Made by a program: the position numbers and the translations under genes. The notes under the pieces are model-generated. The model did not search any database, was not told the origin of the DNA, and saw only the letters and a list, made by a program, of their open reading frames with translations. From assembly GCA_051294905.1 (NCBI GenBank), contig CM119384.1:5456001-5520000 (forward strand): a stretch of 64,000 nt of DNA. Direction: 5' to 3'. Positions 41,801 to 53,658 of the stretch are shown here, one piece after another. The stretch comes from Botryllus schlosseri (lineage: Eukaryota). Position 1 is the stretch's first letter. Each line of letters opens with the position of its first letter.

Positions 41801-44800
41801 AATGGTCATTCACAGCAGGCCGATATTCTTTAGTATGATTCCGTAGCTGCCGACTTGTAGCACGGTCCGCTTTTTTGCTGTTTTTTAAGAAACGGCATAC
41901 GTAGATCAGATGGCGAGGAGGAGACTAGATGAAGGTCCAACATTTTGGAAGGGACACACACCAGTGTAGCCAACACTACCGTTGTTCTTGTATCAATACG
42001 ACTGGACGCTTTGAACATACATTAGCCCTCATTTAAAGAGTTCCCTCCCCTTACCACGAATCGCCGGTGATAGTCGGTGGCGTTTGTTGGATCGACGCTA
42101 TGGGCGCTCTCATTTCCTGCGTTTGACGGCGTTACATTGCGTTTGTTGTCGCTCGGCCGCTGTTGCGTGAAAGCTGGAAATGATCGCGTAGCGCGCAGCC
42201 GTTCTCGAAAGTCGCAGGAAACGGTGGCACTCGGTGTAGGCTTTCAAACGCAGGAAAGCCGGTTGGGATTGATTGCAGGCGGCTAGAGAGCGCGACTGTT
42301 CGGTCTGTCTTCTTGCGAGCGATGGAATTAGGCGTGTGTCGGATTTTCAGAAACACGGCTTCGTAGATAACAATAGTATGGCCAGACTATATGATCATAA
42401 TCGGAGGTTCTATTATTGGTATCCGCTCAAGGCACAATGCGACGTAATGAGCTGATAGAACATCCACTTCGTAGTAGAAGTAGAAGTACTTCGTTATGGA
42501 CCAACTCCGAATCTACAACACATACATTGCTCGTTGGAAATGCATGAGAAGCGCCTAGCTTTTTACGATCGATATCGCCTCCGATTGCAATCAATATAAT
42601 TGAACTGACCAGCTTCAAACCGATTATTCCCGGCGGTAAATTGTGTGATGCGACAGAATTGCACTATAGGTAAGATCAAGAACCATCAAACTACATGGCG
42701 ATGCCGCGATTTCGCGCGACTCGCTTCAGCCAACGTTACAGCGGTCATCTCGCTTCGCTGAAGGGAGAGTACTTGAATGGGTTTTGCGCGCGTTCTGAAG
42801 TGGTCACTGGTCAGTTCCATTGTTCGCGTCCTTGAACAAATCCGATTCGGCGCTCTGGACAACTGCTAAGATCGGCTATTGTGCGTCGTCAAGGGCGCAG
42901 CACTCGACTGGACAATGCCGATGTCCGCACAATCGCGCCTTGTATGCACCTCGTGCTGAACAGCGCCCGGCTTACACGCGTGCCGGCGCTATCCAGAAAA
43001 TCGATTTAATCAAGGCTGTCTCGTCGCTGGTAATACGCGTGGATCAAGGTCGATTTAAACGCAATTACTCCTCGGTCGTTTATAAGCCGCGGCACGGTGA
43101 CCGTCTTAAAGTCATTACTATGCGATATGTTCACGTGCGCGGGATTTATCAAGTTACGGCCGTGAAACTGAAGCGAGGTAACATCGTTTTAATCCGGCTG
43201 TCTTGGTATTTCGACGGGTTACAGGGCTTTTTCTTGGCTGGTCACGTACAGGTTAACTCGAGATGAGTTGTTTTGCCGTGGTCTTTGCACTACTGCCGTA
43301 GCTTTGGCCTTTCTCTATTTTTGGCCGCGCTCTCGTTTTGTTGAAAGAAACGCCGGCGTTTTCTCGTCCGTTTTTCTCTCTTCCGACGCGCACGTTACGT
43401 CTCTCTTTCCTGTCTCTCGTTTTTGAAATGCGAGCCCGTCGGCTGCGGAATGTTACAGCCGGGATGCCTTTCTATTCTCGTAAAGCAAACTTGAGGCGTC
43501 AATGGCGCGCGCTTGCCATTGTTCTGCGAGTGCGCGCCGATTTCGCTGCGTCTCGGTGTAAGCCCTTGTGAATACAGCCCCTGCGTTACAAGTCATGATT
43601 TTTTACGCGAAATTAACAACGCGGTGTGCGAAATGCTTATTTGATTCGAGCATGTTCACATTCAAGTCAAATACAAGCAATTCCTTCTGTCAGCAACTAG
43701 TACCATCAGTCAAAAATATTTGGGTTTATTTAAACAGCCTATTTAAAATAGGAATATACTATTCAATTGCGTATTGACCTTCTGTACGTCCAATAAGCTC
43801 GTCAAATGCTACACACTGCTTCAACTTATTTTGCCGAACAATGCGTTCAGTCAAAATATGACTATTTATTCGGGTCGCAAGATTTTATTGACCTGAAGTA
43901 TTATTTTATGTGAGTCAACGCGTATGCGTAAACACTAACAATTTACTCTGTCAAAATATGACGACTATTTGTTAGGGTCACACGATTGTATCGATCTGAA
44001 TTGTTTTATAAACGAGTCACCTTGAACGTGTCGGGAACCACTGATGTAGGCCAAAACGGGTGCCTGGTTTCAAATAACTACTCTAAAGTCATTTCCACAC
44101 CTCCATCCACGTCTTTTCGTTGTCGCATTGTGTTTTTTTAAAGGCGGAAATCATTAACAATGCACTCCTCTGTAATTGTCACTCTGTTTTGCAGTGCATT
44201 GCCGAAGCCAGCGACAGAGCCCAGGCATATCGACAGAAAAAGATCCCAAGACCAGGATTCGCAGCCCATTCCGATTTCGCCGCGGACAGCTCCGGACCGG
44301 AACGCGATTCGTCACGGTAGGATTATCGCGGTGGCAGTCCCGGGAATTCTGTTTTCCGGCGCACGCAACCAGCTATCGCTTTGGCGCTTATGAATAATAG
44401 ATGGCGTTCGATGGAATAAAGTCAGGCCGGGTGCCTTGTGTATGAAATATAAAGCGTAGGCACAATTCCATCGGAAAATTAATGGGCTCGTAAATATTTC
44501 GCTCCAGATTTTTCTCCCGGGATTAACCCTTGTACTGTAAACGGCAAAAGTGAGCGAGCATTAAATACAATGGCGTCGATTTAACGCAAAGTGTATTTGA
44601 ATAACCAGTATGAAAAATTTATTCAACCGGATGCAGATTTTGTCCTAGCGCTATTACGGCATTTATGTCAGATTTGTCCACGCGAATGGATTAGTTTAGT
44701 ACAGCTGTTCCAATCTCTTTATGGTCTTGACCCAATTTCCGATCTGAAAATGTTACATGGTCCATGAAGTGAAAAGAAAGACGAGACCTTCAATGAGACC

Positions 44801-45118
44801 TACTTATGGCCTATTTGGGAAACTGATTACTAAAGAAGAAGCAAAATTGAAAAATGCATTCATATTTAAATAACCCAGATATTTTCGACTGACCGTCGCC
44901 AGGGGTGATCGTCAGCAGCGAGTAATGTTCTTTTGAATTCTCTACTAGTTGCTGATGATTATACCCTGACAAGGGTCAGTCGAAAATATTCGGGTTCATT
45001 TCAATATGGATGGATTATTCAGCTGTATACTGAAGTTGTGTGCCTCCAAGAGTCTCTTAACCCTCCTCCCGCGGTCGGCCTCAGGACCGAATTTTAATGC
45101 ATTTAGAAAAAGATTCAT

Positions 45119-45205
45119 AAAATCTGAACCACGGGACTTGAACCGACGCCTAATATATCGCTGTAATCAGGAAACAGGCGCCTAACCAACTAAGCTACTC
45201 TGAAA
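45119..45205 (-). other. tRNA-derived Pol III promoter unit (A box, B box, T-run); not a canonical tRNA
   Basis: Minus strand: TAGCTTAGTTGG (45197-45186), GGTTCAAGTCCC (45144-45133), then TTTT (45122-45119). A D-stem can form; the acceptor stem does not pair. Confidence 0.6.
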
Positions 45206-47128
45206 GCGAGAGAGTAACAGGTGATGCCCCTATACCGGGAAGTGTTCTCAACTTTTTGAAAATAAAAGAGAATTCGACTTTTGAATTTGCTGCTACGTCA
45301 TACACGGAGCTGCTCGGGATAGAGTCATCGCCTGACTGATTTCACAGCAATATCAGGATTCCAAAACGACCTGAGTGAGGTTCTTACGATAACACAGTCG
45401 ATTGTAACGAGTGCTGATGTACCGATGGCTACAGCTGGCTACTGCGTGTTCGACGCCAGGCGTCTCGCATTCAGCGCACATACACATGTTCGAAAATGAC
45501 GTAGTATCGCGGACGATGAAATTATTCATTTCACAACGCCGTTATATGGTAATCGCTTATCAATTCTTTGTACGAGATAGTGTTATGTGTTGAAACGAAC
45601 TTTGCCGTTGTAAAACAACTATACCTGAATTGGTTGAATTGACAGGTAGTCATACCTGCAATATGAATACACATTCTTACTGATATTTTAGTTGGCATTT
45701 CAAATCAGTTTATCAAATATTATGCAAGCCATCGACGGTGGTGGTGTAGACAAACGCTTTGAGACAAGGCCTATCTATTGAACAGATAATAGGCATCCAC
45801 AACCACCTCAGCTATCGCAGAAGAATAGTGGTTTCTGTACCACACGCGCATCGCAGCAATCAGTTTCGAAGTGCTTTCGCGACAGCAGAATCTACATATC
45901 TATACGATACATCTATACGCTAACTTGACAATCGACATTCAGCCATATTTTGGTAAAAGAATATAGTATATTGCATGATACAACATATGAAATAATGCAT
46001 CACGCGTGGAATACAACCGCAAATTGAAATGGTAACAAACCAAATCTAGCACCAACAAATGGAAAACCATGTCATGGGTACAATGATGGCTTCGTATGAA
46101 ACAATGTAGATGATGAAGTATATAGTATATATTGACGACTCAACTTATCGCAAAGATATACCTTGTTTTGCGTAATCCGCAACTTGAAATCTGCGCTAAT
46201 TACAACAGCAAAGATATTGCGGCATGTTATTGCTTAGGTAATAACATAGTATCCCCGAAATGATTCATTTCACAACGCGCCGGTATATGTAATCGCTTAT
46301 CCATCGTTTGTACGAGATAGTGCTATGTGTTGAAACGAACTATGCTGTTGTAAAACAACAAGAACTGAATATATAGTGGTTGAATTGACCGGCAGTTATA
46401 CCTGCACTATGAAATACAAGTTACTGATATTTTAGTGGGCATTTCAAATCAGTTTAGAACATATTATGCATGTTATCGACAATGGTGGTGTAGGCAAACG
46501 CTTTGATACCGGGCTATCTTTTGAACCAATAATAGGTATCCACTTTCACATACCCCCAGCCATCAAAAAATATATGGTATTATTTATGCTACACACGCAT
46601 CCCAGCAATCAGTTTCGAAGTGCTTTCGCGACAGCATAATCTACAGGCCTAAATCCGCTAACTTGAAAATCGATATTCAACCATACCCTGGGCAAATAAT
46701 TTATTGCATCCCACAATAAATGAAATAATGCACCATGTATGTAATGCATCGACAAATCGAAATATCAACAAACCACATTTCACATCAACAAACGGAAAAG
46801 CTATCTCGGATACAATGATGGTTTCGTATGAAAGCATGTATAGCATCGTCGACGAATGAAGTTGTTACAAAAATACACCTTGCATACACTGCAATGAAAA
46901 TAGGTCGAATGTTTTGAGTTGCGCCGACATTTCTTGCATTTCTCATTCGAACAGCGCAATAATAATGACACCATTTTTCTGGAATATCAGGTATGCATAT
47001 CAGCATATGCGACAATTACAGGTCAAGTCGCATGGCAACATATAGTAAATAAATGCATCACACGCGTAATACAACAGCAAATAGAAATGAAAACAAACCA
47101 CATGTAGCACCAACAAATGGAAAACAAA

Positions 47129-48819
47129 TCACGGGTACATTGATGGCTTCGTATGAAACCATGTATAGCATTGGCGACTGGTGCTATTGCAAAGATATAC
47201 CTTGCATACACTGCAATGAAAATAAGTCAAACGTTTTGACAGAGTTACACCGACTTTTCTAGCCTCTCTCAGCCGAACCGCGCAATAGTGACACCGTCTT
47301 CTGGTACCAGATGTGTATATCGGCATATGCGGCAATGACATGTCGAGACGCATTTCCAGAGGGCCTATTTGTCGTGGCAAGCTTATTCTGGGTCTGGGCG
47401 CGTGGTTGGATGTTATCAGCGCATTGATTAGATTGAGCCGGAATTTGATGCCATTGGATTTGCTGGTCGTCAAATTTTCAAAAATGACCCGGGCGTTGTG
47501 GACAGAAATCTCGAGCAGATACGAAAATACCTTACGGTACCAGACTCGCGATTGGCGACCGAGTTTATAGTACTTTCGCATCTGATCGAATCCATCCACC
47601 CCGCCCATGAACTTGTTGTAATCTTTGATTACTTGTGGACATGTTACCTCCACGGTTTTTCTACCCGCCCCACGCCTCTTCACACTAGACATTTCCCCCT
47701 CCGCATCATGAATGGTCGACATAACATAGACTGGACGATTGTCACACCAGGCATAGCACAATATGCCTTCAGATGACAATCGCCAGTTTAGGTCACCTCT
47801 TTTTGCCTTTGTGCGGCCGGTTTTTGCCATTTGAATTTCCTTTGGAAATCCCTTACGCGATGAACGCACTGTGCCACACGCGTACACGCCTTTCTCTTTC
47901 AATAATTTCAATAGGGCCGGACTCGTATAGTAGTTGTCCATATACAAGTGTTTTCCCTGATGGAAGAATTCATCCATGAGGGAGAGTACTACAGCACCAG
48001 AGAGGCCATACTCTGCTGTGATGGGAGCCGAAATCGGGTCTTCACCGATATAGATCTGGAAATTTGAGACATAAGACGTCGAAGACTCTGCCAGTACCCA
48101 AACCTTTATTCCAAATCGAGTTCTTTTGGCTGGGAGGAATTGACGAAAACCAACACGACCTTTGAAGGCAATCATTGATTCATCGATCGACAATTCTCTC
48201 CCAGTATTATATTTGTTCAGACAATTATCTCTAATCATCTCCAGAAATGGCCGAATCTTTTTCAATTTATCGGTTTGGGTGCTGGCAGAATCTTCTCTAG
48301 CCTGTGTTTGCGTACAAGGGCCTTGGTCGGGAAGGGGCTCAGGATCAGAGAAGTAAAGATTACGATATATCTGGAAAAAGCGGTCGCGAGACATTGTTTT
48401 TCCGAAATTTGGGCACTCTATCAAGAAACACTCATGGCTCCAATACATTTCCATGTCGGGTAATTTTAGTATACCCATCGCAATTACCATACCGATGAAA
48501 CACTTCATCTCGGGGACATCGACATCTCTCCATGCTATCATATGGCTTTTTTTAGCAGGTGGCTCGTCCCCCCTAGCCGACCTATTCCGCTGTCGTAGTG
48601 CTTCTTTGCGACGGTAATTTAGATTTGTTTTATCCGTTATATGACGGAATACCTCTTCAGAAAATATTTGAAAGAAACAGTCAATTTCCGTTGGATTTCG
48701 TCCTAAGCTGCGATTCGGTACAGATGCCGTGCCAGTAAATTGTTGCCGGTTTATGATTGGGACTGCTGGTGATGGCTGGCTCCACGTGAACTGCTGGTGT
48801 TCTCTGCGGACTTCAGAGT
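47129..48819 (-). CDS. piggyBac transposase exon 3 (DDD core and C-terminal cysteine-rich domain)
   Basis: Motifs SIDESMI, YMDNYYTS, MGGVDGFDQ and CHYC...CSVCKVYLC...CYTWFH; acceptor ttattttgcag (AG at 48821-48820), phase 1. Confidence 0.95.
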
Positions 48820-48880
48820 CTGCAAAATAACGTAATAAATCTTTCAAAATTACAAACAGAATAATTTGATGCTAACTTAC

Positions 48881-49099
48881 CTCGGGAAGTGCCAGGAATC
48901 CCGTCACGTGAGTTATTCGCCCGTGAGTTCGTCCGCTGTCTATACCTTTGTTGCGAGGAGATGGGGTCTGGTAAAGTGAGTTGTTGTGGGTCGTCCTGCA
49001 GACTTGTGGGCGACGGTTGTCGGTCACTCGCCTCTGAATCGTCCAGATCTACACCTGCAAAATCGTCATCTCTCTCCATGTCTTCAAGACGTATGTCCT
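48881..49099 (-). CDS. piggyBac transposase exon 2 (acidic N-terminal region)
   Basis: Acceptor gcgtttcag (AG at 49101-49100), donor GAG|gtaagt at 48880; 219 nt, phase 1/1; a 61-nt intron joins it in frame to exon 3. Confidence 0.8.
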
Positions 49100-49198
49100 C
49101 TGAAACGCATACCAGCAAATATTGGTTATCATAAATAGGACTTGCAAGAGCTAAATTCAACGCACCTCGACTCAAAACAACATCTTCAGTGCGTTAAC

Positions 49199-49301
49199 CA
49201 TAATTTTCATCATCACTGTCACATTCAATGACATCATCGTCGTTCTCTGCATTCAAAACTATATCCAACAGTTCGAGCGCTGTCAGGTTTTTTCTAGCCA
49301 T
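49199..49301 (-). CDS. piggyBac transposase exon 1 (MARKNLTALELLDIVLNAENDDDVIECDSDDENY)
   Basis: ATG at 49301; typical acidic piggyBac-like N-terminus. A phase-1 donor G|gttaac at 49198 gives a 670-aa protein; an alternative donor at 49165 retains an in-frame TAA. Confidence 0.65.
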
Positions 49302-51322
49302 CACTATTCGTTCTTTCGCATCTCAGTCGACAGCGAATGACATTATACGCAAACAACATCAGATTTTATGTACTGAATACCAGATGAACCACCTCTTTGA
49401 ATCTGCCCCACATCAGGCGTACTGTCTAAAATTATGTTCATTTGAGTAGACTGGCGCCAGATGCACAACGTATTCTTCTGCATCATTCCCATCCGAGCTT
49501 TGATGTGCCGGTCAGTTCTGTTTTGTTCGGTACCATGGGTCAGATCTGAAACATTCTCACCAGAAGTGCAGCCATTCACGGACATAAATTTGCTGTCATA
49601 TCAATTGCGCGTTGGAGATCTTGTAGCTCGCTGAACACCATGATGATAATATTGATGTATTAGTATGAAAAGCAGCAATCGATATGAGTAATCTGCAACA
49701 GCAAATCTACCATAATATTTTAGTAAAAGAATATATTGCATGACACAATATATGAAATAATGCATCACGCGTGTAATGCAACAGCAAATTGAAATAGTGA
49801 CAAACCACATCTAACTCCAACAAATGGAAAACCATTTCACGGGTACAATGATGGCTTGGTATGAAACAATGTAAATGACGTAGTGGCCTATATAGCATTG
49901 GCGACTCAACTTATTATAAAGATATACCTTGTTATGCGTAATCTGCAACATGAAATCTGCGCCAAGCACAACAGCAAATAAATTGCGGCGTGTTATTGTT
50001 TTGGTAATAACATAGGATCCCTGACGTTGAAATGATTCATTTCACAATGTCGGTATATGTACTCGCTTTTGTCCATTCTTTGTACGAGATAGTGTTATGT
50101 GTTGAAACGAACTTTGCCGTTGTAAAACAACTAGGACTGAATTGGTTGAATTGACAGAGTCATACCTGCAATATGAATACAGTGCTTCACTGATATTTTA
50201 TGGGCGTTTCAAATCAGTTTATCACATCTTATCGAGCGGTGCGTTTCGTGCGCTACCACGGGAAAGATGCGCAACACTTTCACCAGAAATGTCGTAAATT
50301 TGCTGTCATATCAAGAGCGGAGATCATGTAACTCACTGAAGATGGTAGTGTTGATGTATTGGTATGAAAAGTACGAATTATCCATATGCGTAATCTGAAA
50401 CAGCAAGTCCGCGATAATCACAACATGGAATATATTGCTAAAACCCACGCATGTTATTTCGTAAAATATGTTTACTTCCAATTCGAATAATCTGTCCTGC
50501 GACCAATGTTAGGTATAAGCATTACAATAGATGGGCGATGACATAGTCAACAGCTGTTTGGAGAAAAGAGCTGCATATGAATATGACGCCTGTAACGGAG
50601 ATGCGCTGGTCACGGGCGCTGGTTTATCTCGCGCGCGCACATGCACTCGAGCGCCGCCGCAAGTTGTATTTTGCGCAAAACGTTTTTGTGTATTCAATCG
50701 GCATTTTGATGAGGTTATTTCATAGTCTAATAGGTTATTTATGGCTCGACGTATGCGTATTGATACTAGCTATCCATCTGAAATAGATGTAACTTTCTGC
50801 GACCAGTATAACGCAAGATATTCGGGATTAAGTGAAGCGTGTTCGTGAAAATACAATCCGGGCTCATGCATGAGCCAACCGCGTAGCGAGGGTTAGAATA
50901 ATAAAAATGGTCGGCACATTCGCCCTGACCTACTAGCGACCTATTTGGGAAGCTGATTATTAAAAAGAAAATAGATCAGCACCTTTGTGACCCCAGATAA
51001 AAAAAAAACGATCCCCAGGTTAAAAACACTGATTTGGTAGAAAAAGTACAAAACGATGTATTAATATCGCTATACAATTGAACAGTGTTGAAATAAACCG
51101 GAGTATTTTCAGCTGACACTGGTCAGGGTAATAGTCAGCAACTAGCAGACAATTGAAAAGAATATTGTGTATCAACAATTGTATCTACTACTAGTTGTTG
51201 ATGATTAAACCAGACGAGTGTCTGGTTTATTTCAATACGAATATGTTATTCAATTCTGTGTCGAAGTTCCATACTTCCAAGAACCTCATCTAAGCGTCTA
51301 AGACCGCTATCATAATTCTCAG

Positions 51323-53119: not shown

Positions 53120-53658
53120 GTGAGCCCGATTTTTCTTATTTGGCTTTATAATTTTAATCATGGAAGCCAATGATTCGTGTCGAGTAATTACAGTCGATTA
53201 TTATGAGTAATGGAAAATATACGCGCCCAAGCCAAGAGTGATATTTCAATATACGACTGAACTGTGTATTTGTGTTGAAATAAACCCAAATCTTTTCAGC
53301 CGACACTCGTCAGGGTGTAATCGTCGGCAACTAGTCGAGAATTGAAACTAATATTCAACATCAACAATCGTATCTTCAGATATTTCATCAACAAGGTTAT
53401 TCTTGTACTTTTGAAGTCGTTGCTGTTTGACCCGACCTGCAGCCCTAGTCGTAACGGCCGTATCATCTCGAAATTTGTGGTCGCCTTAGCCTCGAGTAGA
53501 ATTCTGGTTTGAAACAACATCTCTGTGTCGGCAAATTTTACAAAGGCCGTAGAAAACTGTGCATTTCGGACTTGTCGATATCGAATGTCGAACACGACAA
53601 GATCTTGCGCCGTAACATTATTCGCGTGACTACTCCGTGCTTTCTTTCACGGCGCTAG

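What the first reader, a model, noticed from the sequence alone, without database searches (positions are those of the whole stretch)
45520..50420. piggyBac gene is bracketed by long direct repeats built from its own C-terminal coding end
Seen: ~515-bp direct repeats at about 45943-46457 and 49710-50223, within tandem units of roughly 710-740-bp period. The units contain degenerate copies of the end of the ORF: KVYLCDKLSRQ...FHTKPSLYP* (~46060-46190), a longer CRD copy HMLICIP...CHYYCAVRMRNARNVG (ORF 46785-47015), and KVYLYNKLSRQCY...FHTKPSLYP* (~49835-49935) lying upstream of the start codon; the true end is KVYLCNSTSRQCYTWFHTKPSMYP*. A gene's 3' end repeated ahead of its own 5' end is unusual. 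Inference: relic of a head-to-tail multimer or circle re-integration; the repeats allow recombinational pop-out of the transposase to make non-autonomous derivatives, and may supply terminators or alternative CRD tails.
Basis: partly seen in the sequence, partly recalled or inferred. Interest (0 to 1): 0.7.

Follow-up and report, generated by a model that had tools for sequence, protein, structure and literature searches.

The report
piggyBac transposon that sheds its gene
A 5.8-kb piggyBac jumping gene in a sea-squirt genome carries half-kilobase direct repeats on both sides of its transposase gene, and 19 shorter gene-less copies elsewhere in the genome carry one hybrid repeat each, showing that the gene has been cut out between the repeats at least four separate times to found new dependent elements.

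Summary
The window holds one complete piggyBac element (45061-50892, TTAA/TTAG flanks, gene on the minus strand). A ~520-bp block lies on each side of the transposase gene in direct orientation: L at 45945-46467 and R at 49715-50232, 80-83% identical. Each block contains a decayed copy of the gene's last 24 codons plus about 90 bp of its 3' flank.

This is the only gene-bearing copy of its subfamily in the 495-Mb genome. Nineteen other copies (93-99% identical) are gene-less; the 18 complete ones measure about 2.0-2.4 kb, and nearly all have intact ends and TTAA duplications at unrelated sites. Each carries a single block that is a mosaic, L-like on one side and R-like on the other. There are at least four different switch points, which sort with four or more lineages of different age. 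That is the footprint of repeated homology-directed deletion of the gene, much like solo-LTR formation.

All interior modules follow one circular order. The last interior module is joined internally to the first, and there are no internal terminal repeats. This fits decayed head-to-tail copies of the element's interior, not a re-integrated excised circle.

Terminator or alternative-tail roles were not tested. Read support could not be checked.

The parts
45057..45060 (.). TTAA target-site duplication at the 3' end of the element (left side in window coordinates)
   Evidence: Read directly. The same TTAA flanks the derivative copies.
45061..50892 (-). Complete piggyBac element, 5,832 bp. It is the single gene-bearing (master) copy of its subfamily.
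   Evidence: Copies elsewhere match exactly from 45057 to 50895. The terminal repeats are CCCTCCTCCCGCGG... at 45061 and ...CCGCGTAGCGAGGG ending at 50892. It is the only transposase match above 81% aa identity in the genome.
50893..50896 (.). TTAG, the right-hand target duplication with its last base changed
45061..45494 (-). 3' subterminal region including the terminal inverted repeat. It is retained in all derivatives.
45495..45944 (-). Modules alpha1 (45495-45723) and beta1 (45724-45944), the last tandem unit downstream of the gene
45945..46467 (-). Direct repeat L. It consists of gamma1 (45945-46239: 3'-flank copy, decayed tail copy at 46164-46072, D5 motif at 46167-46220) plus alpha2 (46240-46467).
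   Evidence: 83% identical to 49715-50232. Alignment A1 and the peptide positions show the tail copy.
46468..46693 (-). Module beta2
46694..47033 (-). Tandem duplicate of the gene's last ~75 codons plus 3' flank (the decayed copy of the cysteine-rich domain and tail). It is frameshifted by a 4-bp deletion.
   Evidence: 46741-47033 matches 47066-47353 at 77%. See also alignment A1.
47129..48819 (-). Exon 3 of the transposase: DDE_Tnp_1_7 domain, DDD motifs and the C-terminal cysteine-rich domain. Stop codon at 47129-47131.
   Evidence: Pfam PF13843, E 3e-88. piggyBat transposase 9c0f, E 5e-51, with the SIDES, MDNYY and GGVD motifs aligned. The tail aligns to the zinc-ribbon end of P0001.
48820..48880 (-). 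Putative intron 2 (61 nt, GTAAGT...TTTTGCAG). It joins the two reading frames.
   Evidence: The spliced reading ...PGTSRDSEVRRE... matches the intronless sibling.
48881..49099 (-). Exon 2 (acidic N-terminal region)
49100..49165 (-). Putative intron 1 (66 nt, GT...TTTCAG), absent from the sibling
49166..49301 (-). Exon 1. ATG at 49301-49299. There is an in-frame TAA at 49196-49194 (codon 36).
49302..49716 (-). 5' leader X (49302-49519) and module delta' (49520-49716, a 70% copy of delta)
49715..50232 (-). Direct repeat R. It consists of gammaR (49715-50005: 3'-flank copy, decayed tail copy at 49930-49837, D5 motif at 49933-49986) plus alphaR (50006-50232). It lies upstream of the gene.
50243..50892 (-). 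Module delta with a D5-like motif (50243-50438), followed by the 5' subterminal region and terminal repeat (50439-50892). It is retained in all derivatives.

Best explanation
This is the master copy of a sea-squirt piggyBac subfamily. Its non-coding interior is made of decayed head-to-tail copies of one long unit, in the order D5-delta, 5' leader, gene, cysteine-rich end, tail, 3' flank, beta, alpha. As a result a ~520-bp block (alpha + D5 + decayed gene tail + 3' flank) sits in the same orientation on both sides of the transposase gene.

Homology-directed repair between the two blocks removes 3.77 kb, including the whole gene. The repair route could be an intrachromatid crossover, single-strand annealing after a break, or a template switch during gap repair after excision. 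The product is a ~2.0-2.1 kb element that keeps both ends and one hybrid block. A transposase supplied in trans then spreads it.

Shown: the architecture; the hybrid blocks with different switch points; TTAA-flanked insertions at nearly all 19 derivative loci; one gene-bearing copy.

Inferred: which repair pathway acted; which transposase moved the products; and that the repeats began as a tandem duplication of the interior.
For: - Element limits and TTAA duplications.
- L and R repeats.
- Tail homology.
- Copy count: a right-arm search finds 20 copies at 93% or more, that is 1 master plus 19 gene-less copies.
- Mosaic blocks: at the 67 substitution sites (112 sites with indels) where L and R differ, every derivative is L-like to the left and R-like to the right of a single switch.
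  - L020: switch at 45985-46008, the longest identical stretch (24 nt).
  - Ten '97%' copies: switch at 46110-46113, Fisher p 1e-12 to 1e-14.
  - L002 and L004: switch at 46281-46291.
  - L003, L005, L006, L007: switch at about 46306-46341.
- Age and lineage: in a tree of the two arms alone, the window copy nests with the youngest group (99%), then L002/L004 (98%), then L003-L007 (95-96%), then L016 and L020 (94-95%). The switch classes are therefore separate events of different age.
- Tail copies: the L and R tail copies are sisters (support 0.94) and share a ~19-bp insert, so R was copied from an already decayed downstream copy.
- Module order: it is circularly collinear, and the alpha|D5 joint recurs here and in L045, L046 and L047.
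- No internal terminal repeats.
Against: - L and R are only 80-83% identical. This is poor substrate for classical crossover.
- The commonest switch lies in a 4-nt identical stretch, so at least that event may be closer to microhomology joining or mismatch-corrected heteroduplex.
- The youngest group also carries a second small (~66-73 bp) deletion next to the block.
- L016 is a more complex mosaic.
- The window gene has an in-frame stop at codon 36, so it may not be the current transposase source.
- The assembly of this region could not be checked against reads.
- The origin by interior concatenation is read from module order only.
Confidence: 0.8

Rival explanations
1. Reverse direction. A gene-less element with one block was the ancestor, and the window copy arose when a circle carrying the gene plus one block integrated by a single crossover (Campbell-type). 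The derivatives would then be ancestors, not products.
For: A single integration gives the same L-left/R-right signature for the recipient family as a deletion does (reasoning).
Against: Only one switch point can be explained this way, yet there are at least four, each a single-switch mosaic of the same L and R. The arms tree puts the window copy inside the youngest clade, with older derivative lineages outside it. The circle would itself have to come from a two-block master. There are no internal terminal repeats.
Confidence: 0.06
2. Assembly artefact: the gene-flanking repeats result from a mis-join or collapse of several elements.
For: Repeats are where assemblies fail, and read support could not be examined.
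Against: L and R differ at about one site in five, far too much to confuse an assembler. There are no N's. The assembly is highly contiguous, 219 contigs for 495 Mb. The L-specific and R-specific variants are each seen independently in 19 other loci, joined exactly as deletion from this arrangement predicts. Related lineages L045, L046 and L047 show the same alpha|D5 joints.
Confidence: 0.03
3. The repeats are kept because they serve the element, as promoter or enhancer upstream, terminator downstream, or extra transposase-binding sites. Gene loss between them would then be a side effect.
For: The two-block arrangement has persisted while L and R diverged by about 20%, and through several rounds of derivative birth. 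Pokey, a piggyBac of Daphnia, keeps tandem repeats in its 5' non-coding region, for which a transcriptional role was proposed (PMC3849761). The alpha module is the one repeat module also present in the compact sibling.
Against: The compact sibling element (3.25 kb, intact 702-aa frame) has no internal repeats at all. The copies are decaying, with frameshifts and indels. No RNA data were available, and only one AATAAA lies downstream of the stop. This reading does not conflict with the deletion mechanism.
Confidence: 0.15

Closest known systems
Solo-LTR formation in LTR retrotransposons (unequal recombination between the two LTRs)
   Same: Long direct repeats bracket the coding part. Recombination between them removes it and leaves one hybrid repeat. 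Independent events are recognised by different crossover points.
   Different: This is a cut-and-paste DNA transposon. The repeats are internal, inside the inverted termini, so the product keeps both ends and stays mobile, whereas a solo LTR is dead. The repeats are 80-83% identical, not near-identical at birth.
Birth of non-autonomous DNA transposons and MITEs by internal deletion, e.g. microhomology-mediated miniaturisation of a Tc1/mariner element in Aedes (PMC3814204); Ac/Ds and P-element deletion derivatives (own knowledge)
   Same: Gene-less derivatives keep the ends of an autonomous relative, are moved in trans, and outnumber the master. Several families come from one master.
   Different: Known cases have breakpoints at a few bases of microhomology and a different deletion each time. 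Here the same ~3.77-kb segment is lost each time, guided by a 0.5-kb repeat, and a hybrid repeat is left as a footprint.
Pokey / mPok, the piggyBac family of Daphnia (PMC3849761)
   Same: A piggyBac element with arrays of repeats in its non-coding interior that recombine readily, plus MITE-like derivatives regarded as deletion products.
   Different: Pokey's repeats come from rDNA spacer and lie only upstream of the gene. mPok has an unrelated centre and no hybrid-repeat footprint. Here the repeats derive from the element's own interior, including the gene's 3' end, and flank the gene.
Compact sibling piggyBac in the same genome (C4:29071169-29074416, locus L044 570-3817)
   Same: 81% aa identical transposase. 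Related terminal repeats (CCCTACTCCCGCGG...), TTAA on both sides, and the alpha module downstream of the gene.
   Different: 3.25 kb long, with no internal repeats, no introns and one uninterrupted 702-aa frame.

Membership tests
piggyBac superfamily transposon | TTAA target-site duplication | tested here: met
   15 of the 18 derivatives examined show TTAA on both sides, at unrelated flanks. In the other three, L003 has TTAA on the left only, L009's left site reads TAA, and L017 lacks its left end. The window copy has TTAA on the left and TTAG on the right.
piggyBac superfamily transposon | Short terminal inverted repeats beginning CCC and ending GGG | tested here: met
   CCCTCCTCCCGCGGTCGG at 45061 and its imperfect inverse ending at 50892. 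These are the only two copies in the window.
piggyBac superfamily transposon | Transposase with a DDE_Tnp_1_7 core and a DDD catalytic triad | tested here: met
   PF13843, E 3e-88. Alignment to piggyBat transposase 9c0f (E 5e-51) keeps the SIDES, MDNYY and GGVD aspartates. It also matches T. ni piggyBac 6x67 (E 6e-23).
piggyBac superfamily transposon | C-terminal cysteine-rich (zinc-ribbon) domain | tested here: inconclusive
   No Pfam PF13842 hit even at E 10. However, the last 75 residues align (E 4e-12) to the C-terminus of P0001, which carries PF13842, with the C-x2-C ... C-x2-C ... C ... H pattern kept.
Autonomous (currently active) element | Uninterrupted transposase reading frame | tested here: not met
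   There is an in-frame TAA at codon 36 (49196-49194). Two GT..AG intervals must be spliced to join the frames. The 572-codon main exon is intact. A downstream start or an alternative donor could bypass the stop, but this was not tested.
Repeat-mediated (solo-LTR-like) deletion products | The single repeat in the product is a hybrid of the two parental repeats, with parental flanks on each side | tested here: met
   All 18 derivatives tested are L-like then R-like, with Fisher p from 2e-3 to 5e-14. The flanks are 94-99% identical to the window arms.
Repeat-mediated (solo-LTR-like) deletion products | Independent events, shown by different crossover points that sort with separate lineages | tested here: met
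   At least four switch intervals match the clades of the arms tree.
Whole-element concatemer or re-integrated excised circle | Internal end-to-end junction carrying the terminal repeats | tested here: not met
   No further copy of either terminal repeat in the window, allowing up to 3 mismatches.

The most novel reading that the evidence does not exclude
The gene-bracketing repeats are not a one-off accident. On this reading they are a lasting, LTR-like architecture of a cut-and-paste transposon lineage. An interior concatemer, made by iterative gap-repair synthesis, sets a high and recurrent birth rate of mobile gene-less offspring. It thereby shapes the family's own rise and decline, and the upstream copy of the gene's 3' end may be co-opted in expression control.
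Probability: 0.15. Interest if true: 0.7.

Novelty: new variant of a known kind. Interest (0 to 1): 0.5.

Why it matters
How non-autonomous DNA transposons arise is usually inferred from a single deletion with a few bases of microhomology. Here one genome preserves the master, its internal repeats and at least four independently born derivative lineages, each with a readable recombination footprint and a relative age. This gives a natural time series of a transposon shedding its gene. It shows that long internal repeats can make gene loss a recurrent, predictable event in a cut-and-paste element, as it is for LTR elements. It also offers a directly testable system: the rates of L/R hybrid junctions and of reciprocal circles can be measured by sequencing.

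Tried and rejected
- Tandem Repeats Finder gave nothing because the periods exceed 500 bp. BLAST self-comparison was used instead.
- A tRNA-like look of 45100-45190 was not borne out by ARAGORN or Rfam at E up to 1.
- Modules beta and delta, and leader X against alpha, beta and delta, show no detectable homology (z below 3). The upstream and downstream arrays are therefore not simply the same unit.
- I took the inverted pair 44964.../...51128 (CCCTGAC...) for the element's ends at first. It belongs to an unrelated small palindromic repeat family flanking the element.
- I tested whether this subfamily inserts preferentially into that repeat. Only one derivative locus has copies nearby, so there is no association.
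- L027/L030 looked like a second long copy. It is a gene-less derivative carrying a 4.5-kb nested insertion with an 8-bp duplication and no ORF of 150 aa or more.
Neither assembly support, splicing, 3' ends nor expression could be examined, and no other route was tried.
- DNA of the nearest outside relative (P0001, 49% identity, Logan contig) was not available.
- Paper searches found no description of gene-bracketing direct repeats in a piggyBac. The library is partial.
Full report
**What is there**

The window is C14:5456001-5520000 of a 495-Mb, 219-contig animal genome. The nearest named transposase relatives are from the ascidian Styela clava (42-43% identity).

The long ORF in the finding lies on the minus strand (47129-48847, 572 codons). 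It is a piggyBac transposase:
- Pfam DDE_Tnp_1_7, E 3e-88.
- piggyBat transposase 9c0f, E 5e-51, with the three aspartate motifs aligned.
- T. ni piggyBac 6x67, E 6e-23.
- Its last 75 residues align to the zinc-ribbon end of a relative annotated with PF13842. Pfam itself does not call that domain here.

The element's limits are TTAA|CCCTCCTCCCGCGG at 45057/45061 and CCGCGTAGCGAGGG|TTAG at 50892/50893. Genome copies that match exactly from 45057 to 50895 confirm them. The element is 5,832 bp.

**The gene**

I compared the gene with the closest other transposase in the genome, on C4. That one is 81% aa identical and has one uninterrupted 702-codon frame. Against it, the window gene shows:
- an ATG at 49301;
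- an in-frame TAA at codon 36 (49196-49194);
- two short GT..AG intervals, 49165-49100 (66 nt) and 48880-48820 (61 nt, GTAAGT...TTTTGCAG).

Removing these intervals restores the sibling's reading. The second one joins the two frames that the ORF list shows as separate. The main exon is intact. The same features were noted by another first-stage finding on this stretch (s1-300990). I did not test splicing.

**The repeats (observation)**

- L at 45945-46467 and R at 49715-50232, 83% over 539 columns (80% counting gaps).
- A ~740-bp tandem period on the downstream side (45518-46108 vs 46257-46840).
- A 723-bp period on the upstream side (49520-49716 vs 50243-50418).
- A 325-bp tandem copy of the last 75 codons (46741-47033 vs 47066-47353).

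Alignment A1 and the translated motifs show that both L and R contain a decayed copy of the last 24 codons plus about 90 bp of 3' flank. That is about 165 bp of the 520. The remainder is non-coding: module alpha and a 54-bp motif (D5).

**Derivatives exist and have moved**

The genome holds only one transposase of this subfamily. It holds 20 copies of the right arm at 93% identity or more, so 19 copies lack the gene.
- Eighteen were extracted. They are 2.0-2.4 kb.
- Fifteen show TTAA on both sides and two more on at least one side. One (L017) lacks its left end.
- All lie at unrelated sites.
- The nineteenth (L043) is the same kind of element with a 4.5-kb nested insertion that has its own inverted ends and an 8-bp duplication.

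**The decisive test**

If the gene was lost by recombination between L and R, the single block in a derivative must be a hybrid: L-like next to the left arm and R-like next to the right arm. L and R differ at 67 substitution sites (112 sites with indels). At these sites every derivative shows exactly that pattern, with one switch. The switch differs between groups:

| Group | Switch interval | Note |
|---|---|---|
| L020 | 45985-46008 | the longest L/R identical stretch, 24 nt |
| ten near-identical copies | 46110-46113 | Fisher p 1e-12 to 1e-14 |
| L002, L004 | 46281-46291 | |
| L003, L005, L006, L007 | about 46306-46341 | |
| L016 | near 46300 | extra patches |

A tree built from the two arms alone places the window copy inside the youngest group:
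- 99% identity to the ten copies, which are 99-100% identical to one another;
- L002/L004 at 98%;
- L003-L007 at 95-96%;
- L016 and L020 at 94-95%.

The switch classes are therefore separate events of different age, all from a master lineage that kept both blocks. The window copy is that lineage's surviving member.

**Direction of the events**

A single integration of a gene-bearing circle into a one-block element would leave the same signature for one family. It cannot account for four switch points against the same L and R. It also does not fit the nesting of the window copy among the youngest derivatives. I therefore read the derivatives as products.

Which repair route acted is not shown. 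The candidates are intrachromatid crossover, single-strand annealing, and template switching in gap repair after excision. The 17-20% divergence of L and R, and the 4-nt identical stretch at the commonest switch, argue that at least that event was not a textbook crossover. The youngest group also carries a small second deletion next to the block.

**Origin of the repeats (inference)**

I mapped reference modules back onto the element and its relatives. In gene orientation the order is:

5' subterminal | D5-delta | alpha | D5-tail-flank | delta' | leader | gene-CRD-tail-flank | CRD-tail-flank-beta-alpha | D5-tail-flank-beta-alpha | 3' subterminal.

(CRD is the coding part for the cysteine-rich domain.)

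- Every segment obeys one circular order: D5, delta, leader, gene, CRD, tail, flank, beta, alpha.
- Alpha abuts the 3' subterminal region, also in the compact sibling. It is joined internally to D5-delta, which abuts the 5' subterminal region.
- The same alpha|D5 joint is present in two related lineages of the genome: L045/L046 (82-83% identity) and the abundant ~2.4-kb L047 family (78-83% identity, at least 20 scored copies out of 111 candidates).
- This is what decayed head-to-tail copies of the element's interior would look like.
- No internal copy of either terminal repeat exists. It is therefore not a concatemer or re-integrated circle of whole excised elements.
- The L and R tail copies are sisters and share a ~19-bp insert that the live gene lacks (support 0.94). 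R was therefore copied from an already decayed downstream copy, not directly from the gene.
- The compact sibling (3.25 kb, TTAA both sides) has no internal repeats.

**What was not supported or not testable**

- The extra tails are frameshifted or interrupted. Nothing suggests they serve as alternative C-termini.
- Terminator or promoter roles need RNA data. For the same reason assembly support is untested, although the independent occurrence of L- and R-specific variants at 19 loci makes a mis-assembly unlikely.

**Comparison with known systems**

- Gene-less derivatives of DNA transposons are well known, typically with microhomology breakpoints (for example PMC3814204).
- A piggyBac with recombining interior repeats and MITE-like derivatives is known in Daphnia (Pokey, PMC3849761).
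- The nearest mechanistic analogue is solo-LTR formation.
- What is unusual here is a cut-and-paste element whose gene is bracketed by long direct repeats derived partly from its own 3' end. The gene has been lost between them repeatedly, the losses can be dated, and the products remain mobile.
- I rate it a new variant of a known kind, of moderate interest.

Noticed in passing
G000:C2:37982741-38066194 (loci L033-L035, L037-L040): Seven piggyBac-type reading frames of 573-625 codons without stops, 40-51% identical to the window transposase, lie within 85 kb. Three are on one strand and four on the other. This could be a tandem cluster of host-kept (domesticated) transposase genes.
   Followed up: no
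window 48820-48880 and 49100-49165; L044 (C4:29070600-29075000): The window transposase has two short GT..AG intervals and an in-frame stop at codon 36. Its 81%-identical sibling has neither interval and one open 702-codon frame. The 82-83% lineage (L045/L046) appears to keep the intervals. This implies intron gain, or loss through a processed copy, within one transposon family.
   Followed up: partly
window 44848-45021, 51088-51166, 53272-53316: Copies of a small palindromic repeat family (arms around CCCTGAC.../...GTCAGGG) lie on both sides of the piggyBac element. A 44-bp direct match (44797-44840 vs 50927-50969) also sits in both flanks. Derivative insertion sites show no association with this family.
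   Followed up: partly
L043 1619-6092 (C3:23644618-23649091): A 4.5-kb non-coding insertion sits inside a gene-less piggyBac derivative. It has inverted ends (CAGAGGTCTCAAAC...) and an 8-bp duplication (ATGTAGAT), which looks like a hAT-type non-autonomous element.
   Followed up: partly
L047 (C2:4009500-4012900) and at least 20 similar loci: An older, more abundant ~2.4-kb gene-less family, 78-83% identical to the window element. It keeps a 134-bp fragment of the transposase (codons ~432-476), a decayed tail, and two delta copies flanking them. No gene-bearing master for it was found in this genome.
   Followed up: partly
L010 (C6:17403242-17407427): One copy of the youngest derivative group is 2,367 bp instead of about 2,024 bp, because of an internal duplication of the region matching window 45601-45866.
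   Followed up: no
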